The notes beneath the pieces are model-generated. The model had not been told where the DNA came from and did no database searches. It saw nothing but the letters and a program-made list of their open reading frames with translations. Positions 32,806 through 37,649 of a stretch of DNA of 64,000 nucleotides are shown piece after piece (the first letter of the stretch is position 1; each line of letters opens with the position of its first letter). The position numbers were made by a program, and so were the translations under genes. The DNA comes from Obrimoposthia wandeli (Eukaryota): the NCBI GenBank assembly GCA_977020255.1, contig CDROCS010002105.1, positions 248,001-312,000 on the forward strand, written 5' to 3'.

Positions 32806-33135
32806 TTAGGCGATAGGAACAACATGGCAACTCTCGTCAATACGGATTTTTCCTGTTTTCACATCGGTATGATATTTTGCGGTAATAGGAAACTGAGCAG
32901 CACCAAATGTAAATGATGTTGTACTTTTTCCTGAAATCGACGTGTTTAATTGGTTATTACCGCTTGAAATAACCTCTAATTGAATGTGTTCAGCACTTTC
33001 ACTGCGTATAGATATACGTGTATCAGTACTTTGTTGAGTACATTCAAGTTGAAAGGGAAGATCGTCAGCTGCTGCCGCTATTGCACTAAATGAAAAAGCG
33101 GCGATAAACGCCGCTTTTATTATAAAGGTATGCAT
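32806..33135 (-). CDS. Small exported curli accessory protein (CsgH/CsgC-like candidate)
   Basis: Signal peptide, ~88-aa beta-rich mature part with two Cys near the termini; starts 1 nt after the csgA stop. Confidence 0.55.
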   Translation of the reverse strand: MHTFIIKAAFIAAFSFSAIAAAADDLPFQLECTQQSTDTRISIRSESAEHIQLEVISSGNNQLNTSISGKSTTSFTFGAAQFPITAKYHTDVKTGKIRIDESCHVVPIA

Positions 33136-33136
33136 A

Positions 33137-34075
33137 CTATTGTTGAATCACATGAACTTGGTTATTGGCACTGGTTAGCATTGTGACATTCGAGCTATCA
33201 TTTGTTGACTGTGTTACATTTACAAGGTTATAAAATGAGTTGTCAGAAATTGATACTTTTGACTTGGAGTCATTGCCGTACTGGGTTACATAAATATCAT
33301 TATCCCAGCTATCATCAACCTTTAAGATAGACTTATTTCCATTACCATATGCCTTAGATACAAATTTGTTGTCATGTGAATCATTAAATGTTGCTTTGAC
33401 TGTATTGTCGTCACCGTAGACTTTAACTTTTACACGGTTATCATCTGAGTCTGGACCGTTGAATCTAACTTTTGTTATATTCTCGTCGCCATAAACATTA
33501 ATACGTGTGCGGTTATCATCACCACGGCTAGCATATACTAGTGCTGTGTTATCTTTACCATCTTGAAGAACATAACTCTTATTGTCGTCAGCATGCCCAT
33601 AACCCGTGGCTGATGTATAGACGATTTTTGCATCATTTTTCTTACCATACTGATGGATACGGGCAAGGTTATCATCAGAACTTTGGTTGATTTTAACTGT
33701 TGCAGTATTTTTCTTGCCACGTTGTTTAATCTTGGCTTTATTACTGTCAGCATTGCCTTTAATGGCAACTTTAGCTTCGTTCTTGTACCCATGCTGATTG
33801 ACTTTAACAATATTGTAACTAGATAAATATTTAATATCGACATCAACATCGTTTTTACTGCCTTGTTGATAAGTATCGACATCATTACCATGACCTAATT
33901 TTATATTTACATCTGCATTATTTTTAGAATCATCACCATAAGACATTTGTGTTATATCAACGGTATTGCCTGATGAATATTCAATGTTTACATTCGAATT
34001 GTTATCATCACCTGCTGCTGCTGATACGCCACCTGAAACTAATAGAGCTGAAATTGCTAATGCTAACTTTTTCAT
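33137..34075 (-). CDS. csgA: Major curlin subunit, ~12 repeats
   Basis: Signal peptide then ~24 N-x-h-x-h-x-(Q/h) strands with xGxx turns (e.g. NKAKIKQRGKKN, NLARIHQYGKKN); follows csgB. Confidence 0.8.
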   Translation of the reverse strand: MKKLALAISALLVSGGVSAAAGDDNNSNVNIEYSSGNTVDITQMSYGDDSKNNADVNIKLGHGNDVDTYQQGSKNDVDVDIKYLSSYNIVKVNQHGYKNEAKVAIKGNADSNKAKIKQRGKKNTATVKINQSSDDNLARIHQYGKKNDAKIVYTSATGYGHADDNKSYVLQDGKDNTALVYASRGDDNRTRINVYGDENITKVRFNGPDSDDNRVKVKVYGDDNTVKATFNDSHDNKFVSKAYGNGNKSILKVDDSWDNDIYVTQYGNDSKSKVSISDNSFYNLVNVTQSTNDSSNVTMLTSANNQVHVIQQ

Positions 34076-34095
34076 GATACTTTCCTTAGAATGAT

Positions 34096-34662
34096 TTAGT
34101 TTACAGATATATGTTTGTTCATACCATTAACGATAATAATGTGATCATTACCATTTTGATTAACAGAATAATCAGAGTGGCGAACATTACTTTTCTCTAC
34201 CACATAAGCGGTGTTGTTATTGTCTTGCTGATTAATTAATTTTTCATTGCCATAACCTTTTTGAACAAGGTAGGCCTTATTGTTATCACCATTTTGAATG
34301 ATGATGCCATCATTATAAAATCCCGCCTGTAAAATAGCGGCTTCATTGTTATATCCATTTTGATTTATATAGGCACGGTTTCCATTGCCTACTTGACCAA
34401 TTGTTGCGTTGTTATCTCTTCCTTGCTGTTTTATTTTTGCTGCATTTCCTTTATGGCGACCAAAGCTTTTTTGAACAATGGTTGCGTTACTGTTTATTGC
34501 TTCATTAAGATTAACGACGGCAACGTTATCGAAGCCAGATTGTAATTCAGATAAACTTCGCAATTCATTTTTTGCCAAATCTTCCGAAATAGCATGAGTG
34601 CTGAAACTTACTAATAACAAACCTGATAAAGATAATGTATTTACTATGCTTAACGACTTCAT
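34096..34662 (-). CDS. csgB: Minor curlin/nucleator
   Basis: Start ATG 34662; DLAKNEL segment like E. coli CsgB N-terminus; canonical NxAxIxQxGxxN repeats; atypical last repeat. Confidence 0.88.
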   Translation of the reverse strand: MKSLSIVNTLSLSGLLLVSFSTHAISEDLAKNELRSLSELQSGFDNVAVVNLNEAINSNATIVQKSFGRHKGNAAKIKQQGRDNNATIGQVGNGNRAYINQNGYNNEAAILQAGFYNDGIIIQNGDNNKAYLVQKGYGNEKLINQQDNNNTAYVVEKSNVRHSDYSVNQNGNDHIIIVNGMNKHISVN

Positions 34663-35182
34663 GTTTAACAGGCCACCAATCAATTTGTAATTTAATTATC
34701 GGACTTATCACCATTAATTAAATGAACCTTTCTATGATTTGAGAAAAGTTATTGTTATTTATTGGTTGAGAGAAAAGGTCTTAGTAATGGTAATAAGGTT
34801 GAAAAATAAGAGAGCCATCTAATGGAAAAGTTTAGATGTGAGTATAAGTAATTCTCATTTTAAGGTTAAAAGAATTTCTGTTAATACAGCATAATTTGTG
34901 CCATTGAAAATAAATTGTTTAAAATCAATTATTTGAAGTATGCGAGTGTTTAAGGTTGTATAGAATTCAACGTATTATTATGGTTTATTGCAAATTGATA
35001 ATATAAAAGCGAATGAAAAGCACCTACAAATGTATTTAAATTAATTCGTATTCATAAGCAAGAGATATAAGGTATGAATGAGAGAGGGCTAGAGTTGATA
35101 AATTTGGCTGCTGATAGAGTAGTGAAAATAAAAATCGTTAGAAGGGAAAGGCTACGGTAAATAATGGACAAAAACTGAAAGT

Positions 35183-35211
35183 AAAAACGCCCTTAAAATG
35201 ATTAAAGGCGT
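35183..35211 (-). terminator. Terminator after csgG separating csgDEFG from csgBA
   Basis: Minus strand ACGCCTTTAA-TCATT-TTAAGGGCGT-TTTT. Confidence 0.65.
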
Positions 35212-35265
35212 CAGATACTGAACTTGAAATGAAACCCAAGCATTATTTAATCATACTACAGGGAA

Positions 35266-36102
35266 TTACATGATAGGGAATGATTTACTTAAATAAGCCT
35301 GAATAGTTGGATGGTTAATGTCTTCTGAACGTGCTGGTTGCCATAGTCCTGTTTTAATACCGCCGACGATTACATGGACAACGGCTGCATCAATGGCAGA
35401 CATTACAGCGAGGTTTACAGGTTCATTTGTGGAATAACCCAGCTCAGCTTCAAGTAAGTCTTTGTAATCAACAAATTTGAATACGCCAGTCTGTAATTCT
35501 TTCGATAAAATGGTTTTACTTGTTGTAACACTCAGTAGAATTTTACCGCTTCGCACATCAACAGCACGTACATTTACTGTTACTTGGTCGGTACGGTATT
35601 TTCCTGATGCACCAATGCCTAAGTACCGTGCACCTGCACCACCTGTTTTAACATTGGTGTCGTAGGCAACAATTCCGCCTTCCATCATTATATTGGCTGA
35701 TGTTAAAGAAGGAAGATAATCACCATGGTTAGTGGGCGCTTCATGTTTTTTTTGTGCTGCACGAATTATCTTACGTTCGGTTAGTAGGTTTTGTAAGCCT
35801 TCACGCTCGAGTGGGATAAACCATTTTGAGTCTAATAGTGCTGTGGTTAGCAAAGCCGCACCGCCTTGAGGTACTGCGGTTGAAAAGTTACTGTTGGGTT
35901 GTGGTTTATATTGCCCTGTTTGATCTCGGAAATCATAAACCGATACAAAAATCTTTCCTTTAGGAACAGGTAAGGATACAAGATCTTTATATGTTGAACC
36001 TCGTGCCATCAGCGAAGGCTCACTGCTAATTTCGGGTGTACCTAACGACATTGAACACCCTGATAGCGTCAATAATGCAATGCCGAGTAATACTGCTTTC
36101 AT
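35266..36102 (-). CDS. csgG: Curli secretion channel lipoprotein
   Basis: Lipobox LSGC; VSVYDFRDQTGQYKP, LEREGLQNLLTERKIIRA, EAELGYSTNEPV. Confidence 0.97.
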   Translation of the reverse strand: MKAVLLGIALLTLSGCSMSLGTPEISSEPSLMARGSTYKDLVSLPVPKGKIFVSVYDFRDQTGQYKPQPNSNFSTAVPQGGAALLTTALLDSKWFIPLEREGLQNLLTERKIIRAAQKKHEAPTNHGDYLPSLTSANIMMEGGIVAYDTNVKTGGAGARYLGIGASGKYRTDQVTVNVRAVDVRSGKILLSVTTSKTILSKELQTGVFKFVDYKDLLEAELGYSTNEPVNLAVMSAIDAAVVHVIVGGIKTGLWQPARSEDINHPTIQAYLSKSFPIM

Positions 36103-36113
36103 GATGAATATCC

Positions 36114-36518
36114 TTATTGGTCGGGTACTAAACCGCTAACTTGAATCGTCGATGATTCGCCAGTTTCTTTATCCGTGATTTGAATCATCAGGCTGCCATT
36201 GTCATCCACGATATTAAGAACAAAGTCATCAGTGACTAGCTGCCCTGTATTACCCGCCCCAATATCAGATAAAAGTTGGCTAATTAATCGTGATTCTAAG
36301 CTTGCTGCTAGCCGCTCCAGATCGGATTGCTCTTCAAATCCTAAATCATCAATGGGTGCTTTATAGTCATTAATGGCATTTGCTACACCGAGCAAGTGGC
36401 TGCTATTTAATGGGCTTCCACCAAAGCTTGGATTGATCGGTGAATAAACAAGCTCCGTAGCCGAGGCTTTGGTTATGCTAATGCATAGCAAAGCGAGAAT
36501 ACATATTTTCCCTTTCAT
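36114..36518 (-). CDS. csgF: Curli assembly component
   Basis: Start ATG 36518; mature TELVYSPINPSFGGSPLNSSHLL..ANAIN motif. Confidence 0.95.
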   Translation of the reverse strand: MKGKICILALLCISITKASATELVYSPINPSFGGSPLNSSHLLGVANAINDYKAPIDDLGFEEQSDLERLAASLESRLISQLLSDIGAGNTGQLVTDDFVLNIVDDNGSLMIQITDKETGESSTIQVSGLVPDQ

Positions 36519-36528
36519 GTTTCGCCCT

Positions 36529-36990
36529 CTAAATTTCATCATGACCAACGTCAAAAGTGTCTTTTAAGTAACGTTCAATTCGCCATCGAACAACATAAGA
36601 ACCTACAACTTTTACGGCTTCTTCAGCTTTTGTTTCTGCTTGTTGTCTTCCTGGTGATAATGCTGTTCGGTAGATCGGTGTTTGTCGATGGAAAACGGTA
36701 ATAATACTGCCAGATAGAGCCGTTGCTCTTTCTTTTACCGTTAAGTTTTCAGTTAAGTCTTCATATTGATCATTTAGCATTTGAGAAAATATGGAATAAA
36801 AATCGGCTCCCAATCGCGTCATGGTTCTGTCAACAACAACACCTGTTATTTCATTTAAATCATCTAAGCTATCTCTATTTTCAAGTGGCGCTTTGTTTTC
36901 TAATGGGGCAGCATTCTCGACTGCGAATGCTGTGCTAATTAAGCTCATATGAATAACAAACAAAATTAATGCTATTAAGTGAGTTTTCAT
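36529..36990 (-). CDS. csgE: Curli assembly component
   Basis: EITGVVVDRTMTRLGADFY..F, LTVKER..A.SGSIITV motifs; between csgD and csgF. Confidence 0.9.
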   Translation of the reverse strand: MKTHLIALILFVIHMSLISTAFAVENAAPLENKAPLENRDSLDDLNEITGVVVDRTMTRLGADFYSIFSQMLNDQYEDLTENLTVKERATALSGSIITVFHRQTPIYRTALSPGRQQAETKAEEAVKVVGSYVVRWRIERYLKDTFDVGHDEI

Positions 36991-37649
36991 AATGACATGT
37001 CAGTGTAATAATTATTTTTGGCCCACATAAATGCTTGGATTCTATTTTTAACTTTAATTTTTTTAAATACATTATGAAGATGTGTTTTTACAGTGTTTTC
37101 ACTCACATACAACTCTTGCGCAATTTGTACATTTGATACACCTGATACTAATAATTGCATAATTTCTTTTTCACGTGTTGTGAGTTTTACATCATGTTTA
37201 GGTGTAATTGGTTCTTTACTACGATAAGCACTGATCAAGCGTTGTGTTATTTTTCGGCTCAACCATAATTCACCATCAAGGATAGTACGCATGCCTTTAA
37301 CGACAAGTGATAATTCATCAATGTCAAAAAATACACCGACAACATTTGGCCATTTAGCGAGTTGCTCAATATCAATGCTGCCTTGGGAGTTAATGAAAAT
37401 TTCTTTGGTTATTAATGAGTGTGAGCAAACGAAATCTATATAAAGATCATAGCTATCATCCGTTATTTTTGTATGATCAATGATAATAGTGATGTCATTA
37501 AATTTTGCTAACTCACTGTTTTTCAATGTTTCAAATGTTGTGAATTCAATACTGATATCTAATGACTTCTCAAGGTAGTCCTTGAATAGTGAAGATTGAA
37601 GACTGGAACAAGATATAAATAGAAATTTATTATTTTTCTGTTCTAGCAT
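36987..37649 (-). CDS. csgD: CsgD/VpsT-like LuxR-family regulator
   Basis: Degenerate receiver domain, GELWLSR motif, LTTREKEIMQLL...VSENTVKTHLHNVFKKIKVKNRIQAFMWA HTH; first gene of csgDEFG. Confidence 0.88.
   Translation of the reverse strand: MLEQKNNKFLFISCSSLQSSLFKDYLEKSLDISIEFTTFETLKNSELAKFNDITIIIDHTKITDDSYDLYIDFVCSHSLITKEIFINSQGSIDIEQLAKWPNVVGVFFDIDELSLVVKGMRTILDGELWLSRKITQRLISAYRSKEPITPKHDVKLTTREKEIMQLLVSGVSNVQIAQELYVSENTVKTHLHNVFKKIKVKNRIQAFMWAKNNYYTDMSL

What the first reader, a model, noticed from the sequence alone, without database searches (positions are those of the whole stretch)
33137..34075. Non-canonical curlin: half of the Gln ladder replaced by hydrophobics, with a Gln-free central block
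Seen: parsing gives ~24 strands. In alternate strands position 7 is I/Y/A/F/V instead of Q (NNADVNI, NDVDVDI, NEAKVAI, NTATVKI, NDAKIVY, NITKVRF). Three successive repeats also lose Q on the other face (NRTRINV-YGDE, NRVKVKV-YGDD, NKFVSKA-YGNG). Outward positions are rich in K/R/D, and one loop is expanded (TSATGYGHADD). Established: E. coli CsgA and this locus's own CsgB have N...Q on both strands. Inference: a distinct beta-solenoid core chemistry that could alter fibre stability, seeding specificity or surface binding.
Basis: partly seen in the sequence, partly recalled or inferred. Interest (0 to 1): 0.72.

Follow-up and report, generated by a model that had tools for sequence, protein, structure and literature searches.

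The report
Vibrionaceae-type curli subunit, one glutamine ladder
The gene encodes the main curli fibre subunit of a Photobacterium, and its odd pattern (glutamine on only one of the two sheets, plus a glutamine-free middle) is real but is the normal design of this protein across Vibrionaceae, so it is a little-studied lineage variant and not a one-off.

Summary
Window 33137-34075, on the minus strand, encodes a 312-aa secreted curlin with 24 strands. Position 7 is Gln in 9 of 12 motif-a strands and hydrophobic in 12 of 12 motif-b strands. Seven consecutive strands (residues 176-258) have no Gln.

It is the csgA of a csgDEFG-csgB-csgA locus in a Photobacterium of the P. frigidiphilum clade. AlphaFold2 gives a confident two-sheet beta-solenoid (pLDDT 87). 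Its best solved match is Pontibacter korlensis CsgA (Z 33.3).

The pattern is not peculiar to this locus. All 47 other Vibrionaceae CsgA sequences I parsed show the same hydrophobic/Gln alternation: 41% Gln at position 7, and 86% of the non-Gln residues are hydrophobic. Sixteen of them, including Aliivibrio fischeri ES114, also have a Gln-free block. None of 70 CsgA-size curlins from other Gammaproteobacteria does (about 83% Gln).

Sleutel et al. 2023 already define a "degenerate" curlin class that lacks the motif-b Gln or carries hydrophobic N/Q substitutions. So this is a new member of a known kind.

No biochemistry exists for this type. The only genetic test, a V. fischeri csgBA deletion, showed no Congo-red or biofilm phenotype.

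The scan's other notes on this stretch (s1-198714, s1-198742) concern this same DNA, not other DNA.

The parts
33137..34075 (-). csgA: 312-aa curli major subunit of the Vibrionaceae type, stop codon included
   Evidence: ORF. Pfam Curlin_rpt 59 bits against a cut-off of 20.7. AF2 beta-solenoid with pLDDT 87.4. Z 33.3 to 8c50 P. korlensis CsgA.
34013..34075 (-). Signal peptide, residues 1-21 (basic start, hydrophobic stretch, Ala-rich end)
   Evidence: Read from the sequence. pLDDT below 50 for residues 1-21. No signal-peptide predictor was run.
33551..34003 (-). Strands 1-12 (residues 25-175): strict alternation of hydrophobic (motif b) and Gln (motif a) at position 7
   Evidence: Fragments of this part score 12.7-23.7 bits against Curlin_rpt; the first fragment gave no match.
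33584..33616 (-). Expanded 11-residue arc after strand 11 (residues 154-164)
   Evidence: The pLDDT block for residues 151-160 falls to 79.
33302..33550 (-). Gln-free central block, strands 13-19 (residues 176-258); position 7 reads A,V,F,V,F,A,V; the Asn ladder is kept
   Evidence: No Curlin_rpt match for the three fragments that cover it. Still modelled as regular strands with pLDDT 88-95.
33140..33301 (-). C-terminal strands 20-24 (residues 259-312), Gln restored on motif a; the terminal motifs are shared across Vibrionaceae CsgA
34096..34683 (-). csgB: 195-aa minor/nucleator curlin with Gln at seven consecutive strands
   Evidence: Pfam Curlin_rpt 63 bits with 4 stretches. Best NCBIfam hit is CsgB. 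Position-7 string.
32806..33135 (-). 109-aa secreted ORF in the csgC position; no family match; two invariant Cys
   Evidence: No Pfam hit. Found after csgA in 8 other Vibrionaceae loci. AF2 beta-sandwich with pLDDT 80.8. Only generic Ig-like structural matches.
35266..36102 (-). csgG secretion channel
   Evidence: Pfam CsgG, E = 5.7e-83. 99% identical to P. frigidiphilum JCM 12947.
36114..36554 (-). csgF
   Evidence: Pfam CsgF, E = 1.6e-26.
36529..36990 (-). csgE
   Evidence: Pfam CsgE, E = 9.9e-31.
36987..37649 (-). csgD-like regulator (VpsT-like receiver domain plus LuxR helix-turn-helix)
   Evidence: Pfam VpsT-like_REC and GerE.
35186..35212 (-). Terminator-like hairpin (11 pairs) after csgG
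   Evidence: This is a consensus match only.
34857..34884 (-). Promoter-like site upstream of csgB
   Evidence: 10 of 12 matches. The region's promoter-like count equals the chance expectation, so this is weak.

Best explanation
This is csgA, the major curli subunit of a Photobacterium in the P. frigidiphilum clade.

How it most likely works (inferred from the E. coli curli pathway, not tested here):
- The protein is exported by Sec.
- It passes the outer membrane unfolded through CsgG, with CsgE and CsgF as accessory factors.
- It is nucleated at the cell surface by the neighbouring CsgB, which has canonical Gln on both strands.

Its predicted structure (predicted, not solved):
- It folds into a two-sheet beta-solenoid of 12 strand-arc-strand repeats that can stack head to tail into a fibre.
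- Sheet 1 (motif a: N-x-h-x-h-x-Q, then x-G-x-x) keeps the Asn and Gln ladders in 9 of 12 repeats.
- Sheet 2 (motif b: N-x-h-x-h-x-hydrophobic, then a longer acidic arc) replaces the second Gln ladder with an Ile/Val/Leu/Phe ladder in all 12 repeats. This lengthens the hydrophobic core by one rung on the arc-2 side.
- In strands 13-19 the motif-a Gln is lost as well, leaving a module held by the Asn ladders and hydrophobic packing alone.

This design is inherited and conserved across Vibrionaceae CsgA. It is not a local oddity or decay.
For: Family and context:
- Pfam Curlin_rpt 59 bits against a cut-off of 20.7.
- The gene sits directly after csgB and in tandem with csgDEFG.

Fold:
- AF2 gives pLDDT 87.4 and pTM 0.84, with 24 regular strands including the Gln-free block.
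- The top structural match is 8c50_A, P. korlensis CsgA: Z 33.3, 287 residues aligned, 25% identity, rmsd 8.6 A. It stands well above the rest.
- The same entry is found by sequence at E = 1.3e-10.

Conservation of the pattern:
- 47 distinct Vibrionaceae CsgA-type sequences have 41% Gln at strand position 7, and 86% of the non-Gln residues are hydrophobic.
- All 17 in the first sample have a Gln fraction of 0.55 or less. None of 70 CsgA-size curlins from Halomonadaceae, Microbulbifer, Shewanella, Pseudomonas and others does; their medians are 0.66-0.93.
- 16 of 47 have a Gln-free run of five or more strands.
- The alignment with A. fischeri ES114 CsgA is collinear, 33% identical over residues 1-311.
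- 69 of 301 Vibrionaceae species genomes hold a relative.

The allele is real and probably expressed:
- Contigs 98.7% identical or better occur in runs from independent studies.
- In a metatranscriptomic cDNA run, contigs cover only 33068-34661, which is csgB plus csgA. They do not cover the flanks, which DNA runs do cover.

Related experiment: the V. fischeri curli locus is among the most induced genes in biofilm models (PMC10804989).
Against: - No fibre, amyloid dye binding or secretion has been shown for any Vibrionaceae CsgA.
- The V. fischeri csgBA deletion had no Congo-red, wrinkled-colony, aggregate or colonisation phenotype (PMC10804989).
- The protein fails NCBI's enterobacterial CsgA equivalog cut-off: 57.9 bits against 160.
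- The central block has no Curlin_rpt match.
- I infer that position 7 points inward from strand periodicity and from the published curlin structure. I could not read the model's coordinates.
- The RNA evidence rests on assembled contigs from one metatranscriptome study.
Confidence: 0.8

Rival explanations
1. Relaxed or decaying csgA: the loss of Gln reflects drift in a system that is no longer used, and the protein no longer polymerises.
For: The V. fischeri csgBA deletion has no phenotype. The central block is not recognised by Curlin_rpt. csgA diverges far faster than its neighbours: 38% identity to JCM 12947 against 85-99% for them.
Against: - The ORF is intact, with Asn or Ser at position 1 in 24 of 24 strands.
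- The replacements are 86% hydrophobic rather than random, across 47 sequences in three genera.
- The AF2 model is confident through the block.
- Nearly identical alleles persist in independent samples, and contigs from an RNA library cover csgBA.
- The locus is strongly induced in V. fischeri biofilm models.
Confidence: 0.07
2. A beta-solenoid with another main role. It would be secreted by the curli machinery but act as, for example, a divalent-cation-binding or surface/ice-binding adhesin rather than as an amyloid scaffold. The stacked acidic arcs (S-D-D before Asn) would be the working face.
For: The second-best structural match is the Ca2+-dependent beta-helical antifreeze protein 3p4g: Z 21.1, rmsd 2.4 A over 235 residues. 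Asp directly precedes the motif-a Asn in 6 of 12 arc-2 loops. The nearest named relative is a cold-loving species.
Against: - The antifreeze protein's 19-residue Ca2+-binding repeat is absent, and identity to it is 11%.
- Any flat two-sheet solenoid will superpose on another.
- The same CsgA design occurs in mesophilic Vibrio and Aliivibrio.
- The curlin match is much stronger (Z 33.3).
Confidence: 0.05
3. One reading: a core chemistry special to this locus that sets it apart from curlins in general.
For: The exact sequence is absent from a collection of about 15 billion proteins. The best full-length relative among 1.84 billion representatives is 41% identical. Among Photobacterium CsgA sequences seen here, only this one has the Gln-free block.
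Against: The half-Gln pattern is universal in the Vibrionaceae CsgA sequences sampled. The Gln-free block is shared with Aliivibrio and several Vibrio. The class is already described in PMC10192328.
Confidence: 0.05

Closest known systems
Aliivibrio (Vibrio) fischeri ES114 CsgA, in the curli locus studied in PMC10804989
   Same: Collinear over the whole length at 33% identity. It has the same hydrophobic/Gln alternation, a central Gln-free block, similar C-terminal motifs and similar size (314 aa). It sits next to csgB and csgDEFG.
   Different: Its csgBA is divergent from csgDEFG, whereas here the two units are in tandem. It is acidic (pI 4.2), while this protein is Lys-rich (pI 6.1). Its Gln-free block is longer, about 10 strands.
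Pontibacter korlensis CsgA R15.5 (PDB 8c50), the solved centrosymmetric curlin
   Same: Two-sheet beta-solenoid of strand-arc-strand repeats with Asn ladders (Z 33.3, 25% identity). Sequence match E = 1.3e-10.
   Different: R15.5 has Gln at the end of both motifs in a near-symmetric core (PMC10192328). Here motif b has no Gln at all, and arc 2 is longer.
Degenerate (D) class curlins of Sleutel et al. 2023, for example Sediminicola sp. YIK13 A0A0S1S4K2
   Same: The class is defined by incomplete motifs (such as no Q in motif b), hydrophobic substitutions in the N/Q columns, and longer arcs next to them. All three apply here.
   Different: The published example has irregular deviations. Here the substitution is systematic (12 of 12 motif-b strands) and conserved across the family.
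Escherichia coli CsgA
   Same: Same pathway genes (csgB, D, E, F, G) and the same repeat logic. As in E. coli, the core hydrophobics are bulky in motif a and small in motif b.
   Different: E. coli CsgA has 5 repeats, Ser at the start of motif a, Gln on both strands and an N22 targeting segment. This protein has 12 repeats and fails the NCBIfam CsgA equivalog cut-off (57.9 against 160 bits).

Membership tests
Curlin / CsgA (curli major subunit) | Pfam PF07012 Curlin_rpt above the gathering score | tested here: met
   59 bits against 20.7. Taken fragment by fragment, only the N-terminal half and the C-terminal end score; the fragments covering residues 176-258 give no match.
Curlin / CsgA (curli major subunit) | Encoded next to csgB and with the csgEFG secretion genes | tested here: met
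   csgD, E, F, G, B and A lie in a row on the minus strand.
Curlin / CsgA (curli major subunit) | Two-sheet beta-solenoid fold like solved CsgA | tested here: met
   AF2 pLDDT 87.4. Z 33.3 to 8c50_A over 287 residues, though rmsd is 8.6 A. Foldseek alone found nothing.
Curlin / CsgA (curli major subunit) | Canonical kernel N-x-h-x-h-x-Q in both motif a and motif b (QX10Q) | tested here: not met
   Motif a has Q in 9 of 12 strands. Motif b has Q in 0 of 12.
Curlin / CsgA (curli major subunit) | Minimal repeat of Dueholm et al. 2012, X6-Q-X-G-X2-N-X10 (a single Q per repeat) | tested here: met
   Nine of the 12 repeats have Q at the end of motif a. Q-x-G-x-x-N stands in seven of them; strand 2 has a longer arc, strand 22 has no Gly and strand 24 is terminal. 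The motif itself is taken from PMC3521004.
Curlin / CsgA (curli major subunit) | NCBIfam NF007470 CsgA equivalog cut-off | tested here: not met
   57.9 bits against 160. Relatives in Vibrio are named 'hypothetical protein' by NCBI.
Curlin / CsgA (curli major subunit) | N-terminal Sec signal peptide | tested here: inconclusive
   A typical signal sequence is seen by eye, and residues 1-21 are disordered in the model. No predictor was run.
Curlin / CsgA (curli major subunit) | Nucleation-dependent polymerisation into Congo-red / ThT-positive fibres | not testable with these tools
   No data for this protein. The V. fischeri csgBA deletion showed no Congo-red change.
Degenerate (D) class curlins (Sleutel et al. 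2023) | Motif a and/or b incomplete (for example no Q in motif b), hydrophobic N/Q substitutions, arcs longer than 4-5 residues | tested here: met
   measured against the definition quoted.
CsgB (curli nucleator) | NCBIfam NF007506 cut-off; about 150-200 aa; canonical repeats with a degenerate last repeat | tested here: not met
   48.4 bits against 165. A separate, typical csgB lies upstream.
Ca2+-dependent beta-helical antifreeze protein (MpAFP region IV type) | 19-residue Ca2+-binding repeat with a Gly/Thr/Asn/Asp turn in every coil | tested here: not met
   The resemblance is structural only: Z 21.1 at 11% identity. The repeats here run 21-29 residues, mostly 22-24, with curlin motifs. The definition of the family's repeat comes from my own knowledge.

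The most novel reading that the evidence does not exclude
Vibrionaceae CsgA would form a distinct, conserved curlin subclass. It has one Gln ladder, one aliphatic ladder, acidic extended arcs and, in about a third of members, a Gln-free module. Its fibres would assemble or stain differently from enterobacterial curli: for example weak Congo-red binding, cation dependence, or a need for the cognate CsgB. That would explain why the V. fischeri csgBA deletion shows no classical curli phenotype. This gene would be a Lys-rich representative of the subclass.
Probability: 0.2. Interest if true: 0.55.

Novelty: new member of a known kind. Interest (0 to 1): 0.3.

Why it matters
In E. coli, the Gln and Asn ladders are held to drive CsgA amyloid formation (Wang and Chapman 2008, cited in PMC10804989). 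A whole bacterial family has kept the Asn ladders but swapped one Gln ladder, and locally both, for aliphatic residues. That makes it a ready-made natural experiment on what the Gln ladder contributes to nucleation, stability and cross-seeding.

There is also an annotation point. These proteins fall below NCBI's CsgA model and are often named 'hypothetical protein', so curli may be under-counted in marine Vibrionaceae.

For this particular gene, the result is mainly a correction: it is typical of its lineage.

Tried and rejected
- The word-index protein search gave no scored hit.
- Pattern-based locus search with CsgA found nothing in genome contigs. I reached relatives through CsgG instead.
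- The genome search 'relatives' failed because the window's assembly has no relatives in the collection. I then centred on the P. frigidiphilum handle.
- Foldseek against the PDB found no significant match for either model. VIA-align found the curlin.
- Tandem Repeats Finder found no DNA-level repeats in csgB or csgA, so the repeats are old and not recently duplicated.
- The promoter scan was at chance level, 25 found against 25 expected, so I make no promoter claim.
- Cold or marine adaptation as the reason for the pattern is rejected. Marine Halomonas, Microbulbifer and Shewanella keep Gln, and mesophilic Vibrio share the pattern.
- The csgC-position ORF could not be shown to be CsgC or CsgH: no Pfam hit and only generic Ig-like structural matches.
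- I could not read model coordinates, so side-chain orientation was not measured.

Full report
**What is at the coordinates**

The plus-strand frame of 33137-34075 is full of stops. The gene lies on the minus strand and encodes 312 residues. The surrounding genes are all on the minus strand:
- a CsgD-like regulator (36987-37649)
- csgE (36529-36990)
- csgF (36114-36554)
- csgG (35266-36102)
- a 195-aa curlin (34096-34683)
- the 312-aa curlin
- a 109-aa ORF (32806-33135)

Pfam recognises CsgE, CsgF and CsgG with E-values from 1e-26 to 6e-83. Both curlins match Curlin_rpt, at 59 and 63 bits against a cut-off of 20.7. NCBIfam ranks the 312-aa protein nearest CsgA and the 195-aa protein nearest CsgB. 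Both lie far below the enterobacterial equivalog cut-offs.

**Organism**

The window is contig C2105 of a 1.35-Gb, 6912-contig assembly. That is eukaryote-sized, so this contig is a bacterial passenger. Its CsgG is 99% identical to that of Photobacterium frigidiphilum JCM 12947. DNA identity across csgD-csgG is only 87%, so it is a related species, not the same strain.

**Checking the observation**

A dynamic-programming parse, followed by a fixed-register table, gives 24 strands.
- Position 1 is Asn in 22 strands and Ser in 2.
- Positions 3 and 5 are hydrophobic or small.
- Strands followed by a four-residue x-G-x-x arc correspond to motif a in the nomenclature of Sleutel et al. They end in Gln in 9 of 12 cases and in V, V, A in three successive repeats.
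- The alternate strands (motif b) never end in Gln. They end in I six times, F twice, and Y, A, V, L once each. Their arcs have 4-7 residues, with one arc of 11.
- The contrast of 0/12 against 9/12 gives Fisher p = 3.4e-4.
- Outward positions are K/R/D/E in 33 of 72 cases.
- The neighbouring CsgB has Gln at seven consecutive strands.

The only caveats are the strand, and a one-residue register ambiguity at strand 23.

**Fold**

I built an alignment of 50 relatives. With it, AlphaFold2 gives mean pLDDT 87.4 and pTM 0.84. The model has 24 regular strands. The blocks covering the Gln-free region score 88-95.

Foldseek against the PDB found nothing significant. The exhaustive VIA-align search placed Pontibacter korlensis CsgA (8c50_A) first: Z 33.3, 287 aligned residues, 25% identity, rmsd 8.6 A. 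The next row stands at Z 21. The same entry is the only PDB sequence hit, at E = 1.3e-10.

Position 7 lies within the modelled strands and in phase with positions 1, 3 and 5. I therefore infer that it points into the core, as Gln 7 and Gln 18 do in the published structure (PMC10192328). I could not read coordinates to measure this.

**How unusual the pattern is**

This is the decisive point. I fetched 80 csgG-linked loci across Gammaproteobacteria and then 30 more loci from a sample of 301 Vibrionaceae species genomes. I applied the same parse to every curlin ORF.

In Vibrionaceae (Photobacterium, Aliivibrio, Vibrio), across 47 distinct CsgA-type sequences:
- All show the same hydrophobic/Gln alternation.
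- Gln occupies 41% of 1003 strand ends.
- Of the 590 non-Gln residues, 86% are hydrophobic (I 199, L 94, V 85, A 58, F 31, M 31).
- Sixteen of the 47 also have a Gln-free run of five or more strands.
- These include Aliivibrio fischeri ES114, whose CsgA aligns collinearly with this protein over residues 1-311 at 33% identity.

In other Gammaproteobacteria, none of 70 CsgA-size curlins has a Gln fraction of 0.55 or less:

| Group | Median Gln fraction at position 7 |
|---|---|
| Vibrionaceae (first sample, n = 17) | 0.44 |
| Halomonadaceae | 0.93 |
| Microbulbifer | 0.83 |
| Shewanella (short alternating blocks only) | 0.66 |
| Others | 0.82 |

The pattern is therefore a conserved family trait. 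Within Photobacterium, the Gln-free block was seen only in this protein.

**What the literature already says**

Sleutel et al. 2023 (PMC10192328) divide curlins into centrosymmetric, non-centrosymmetric and degenerate classes. The degenerate class is defined by incomplete motifs, with "absence of ... Q in motif b" as the worked example. It also covers hydrophobic substitutions in the N/Q columns and extended arcs. Their extraction expressions explicitly include repeats that lack the second Q.

Dueholm et al. 2012 (PMC3521004) already used a minimal repeat with a single Q.

I found no paper that remarks on the systematic, family-wide version in Vibrionaceae.

The one experimental study of a Vibrionaceae curli locus is PMC10804989. 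It reports that csgBA is among the most induced genes in V. fischeri biofilm models. Its deletion changed neither Congo-red binding, nor wrinkled colonies, nor aggregates, nor squid colonisation.

**How divergent this sequence is**

- The word-index search gave nothing.
- A full HMMER scan of 1.84 billion representatives gave only 74 hits at E of 0.001 or better. The best full-length hit is 41% identical. One 53-residue fragment is 98% identical.
- The exact sequence is not among about 15 billion proteins.
- Named relatives are mostly 'hypothetical protein' from Vibrio xuii and V. mediterranei, with one UniRef 'Curlin'.
- The best full-length match in 301 Vibrionaceae species genomes is 36% identical, and 69 of the 301 have a relative.

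| Part scored | Curlin_rpt result |
|---|---|
| First fragment (residues 25-63) | no match |
| Fragments from residues 52-187 | 12.7-23.7 bits |
| Three fragments covering residues 176-258 | no match |
| Fragment at residues 247-282 | 12.7 bits |

**The allele is real and probably transcribed**

Runs from 15 studies hold the stretch or a part of it. A 3.3-kb DNA contig from another study matches 33091-35265 with 29 differences. Marine-sediment contigs match csgA with a handful of differences.

In a metatranscriptomic cDNA run, contigs cover only 33068-34661, which is csgB plus csgA. The intergenic region and the downstream ORF are uncovered there, although both DNA runs cover all bins. This fits a csgBA transcript. 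It rests on assembled contigs from one study and is tentative.

**Mechanism**

| Status | Statement |
|---|---|
| Shown | Family membership by Pfam, locus context, predicted solenoid fold, conservation of the pattern |
| Inferred from the E. coli pathway | Sec export, CsgG/E/F secretion, CsgB nucleation, head-to-tail stacking |
| Inferred from strand geometry | The motif-b position-7 residues form an aliphatic ladder that takes the place of the Gln 18 ladder and extends the hydrophobic core towards a longer, Asp-rich arc 2 |
| Not shown | Amyloid formation or any effect on stability or seeding |

**Rivals**

- Decay is unlikely. The Asn ladder is intact, the replacements are hydrophobic rather than random, and the design spans three genera.
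- A cation- or ice-binding role is suggested only by the second structural match: the Ca2+-dependent antifreeze solenoid 3p4g, Z 21.1, rmsd 2.4 A over 235 residues, 11% identity. The acidic arcs are also compatible with it. The defining repeat of that family is absent, and mesophilic relatives share the design.
- Uniqueness to this locus is contradicted.

**Verdict**

The gene is a new, rather divergent member of a known kind: Vibrionaceae CsgA, which falls in the published degenerate class. Interest is modest. What remains is that this conserved single-Gln-ladder design has never been characterised biochemically.

Noticed in passing
window 33118-33852 against L009:9354-9803: csgA is the odd one out against P. 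frigidiphilum JCM 12947. Protein identities are CsgD 85, CsgE 90, CsgF 96, CsgG 99, CsgB 89 and the csgC-position ORF 86%, but CsgA only 38%, and it is 217 aa there against 312 aa here. DNA similarity (85-89% in the flanks) stops about 74 codons into csgA and resumes just after its stop codon. This suggests the repeat region was replaced or turns over quickly.
   Followed up: partly
window 32806-33135 (-): A 109-aa secreted ORF in the csgC position has no Pfam or NCBIfam match. It is conserved after csgA in Photobacterium and some Vibrio, with two invariant Cys and a Q-F-P motif. AF2 gives an eight-strand beta-sandwich (pLDDT 80.8). Structural matches are only generic Ig-like folds, and CsgC or CsgH is not among the top rows.
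   Followed up: partly
window 32806-37649; L009-L026: In all Photobacterium loci seen, csgBA lies downstream of csgDEFG on the same strand. In Aliivibrio and Vibrio, csgBA is divergent from csgDEFG (coordinates). This agrees with the scan's note s1-198742 and departs from Dueholm et al.'s statement for Vibrionales.
   Followed up: partly
window 33068-34661: Contigs from a metatranscriptomic cDNA run cover exactly csgB plus csgA and nothing else of the 2.46 kb laid, while DNA runs cover everything. This is a possible csgBA transcript in a natural sample.
   Followed up: partly
G000:C253:4476546-4480289 (L001, L002, L008): Another contig of the same 1.35-Gb assembly holds the assembly's best Curlin_rpt match (45.6 bits, 4.48 Mb along the contig). 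It encodes a 484-aa curlin whose strands alternate small or hydrophobic residues (A, S, V) with Gln. This is a second, unrelated single-Gln-ladder curlin. Further curlin genes lie on contigs C4837, C5106 and C2007.
   Followed up: no
L012, L104, L105, L107, L111, L113-L115: Several Photobacterium/Vibrionaceae genomes carry two csgA paralogues side by side, of 214-269 aa, both with perfect hydrophobic/Gln alternation.
   Followed up: no
P0002, P0009, P0078, P0079: Vibrio relatives of this CsgA are named 'hypothetical protein' in NCBI records (V. xuii, V. mediterranei, Vibrio sp. CyArs1). Only one UniRef entry says 'Curlin'. So curli may be under-annotated in Vibrionaceae.
   Followed up: no
window 33137-34075, model mf85e0ed97ccf: This CsgA is Lys-rich and near neutral (36 K+R against 39 D+E, pI 6.1). 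Most relatives are strongly acidic, with pI 4.0-4.2 in four of the five compared. Charge runs from acidic N-terminal repeats to basic central repeats.
   Followed up: no
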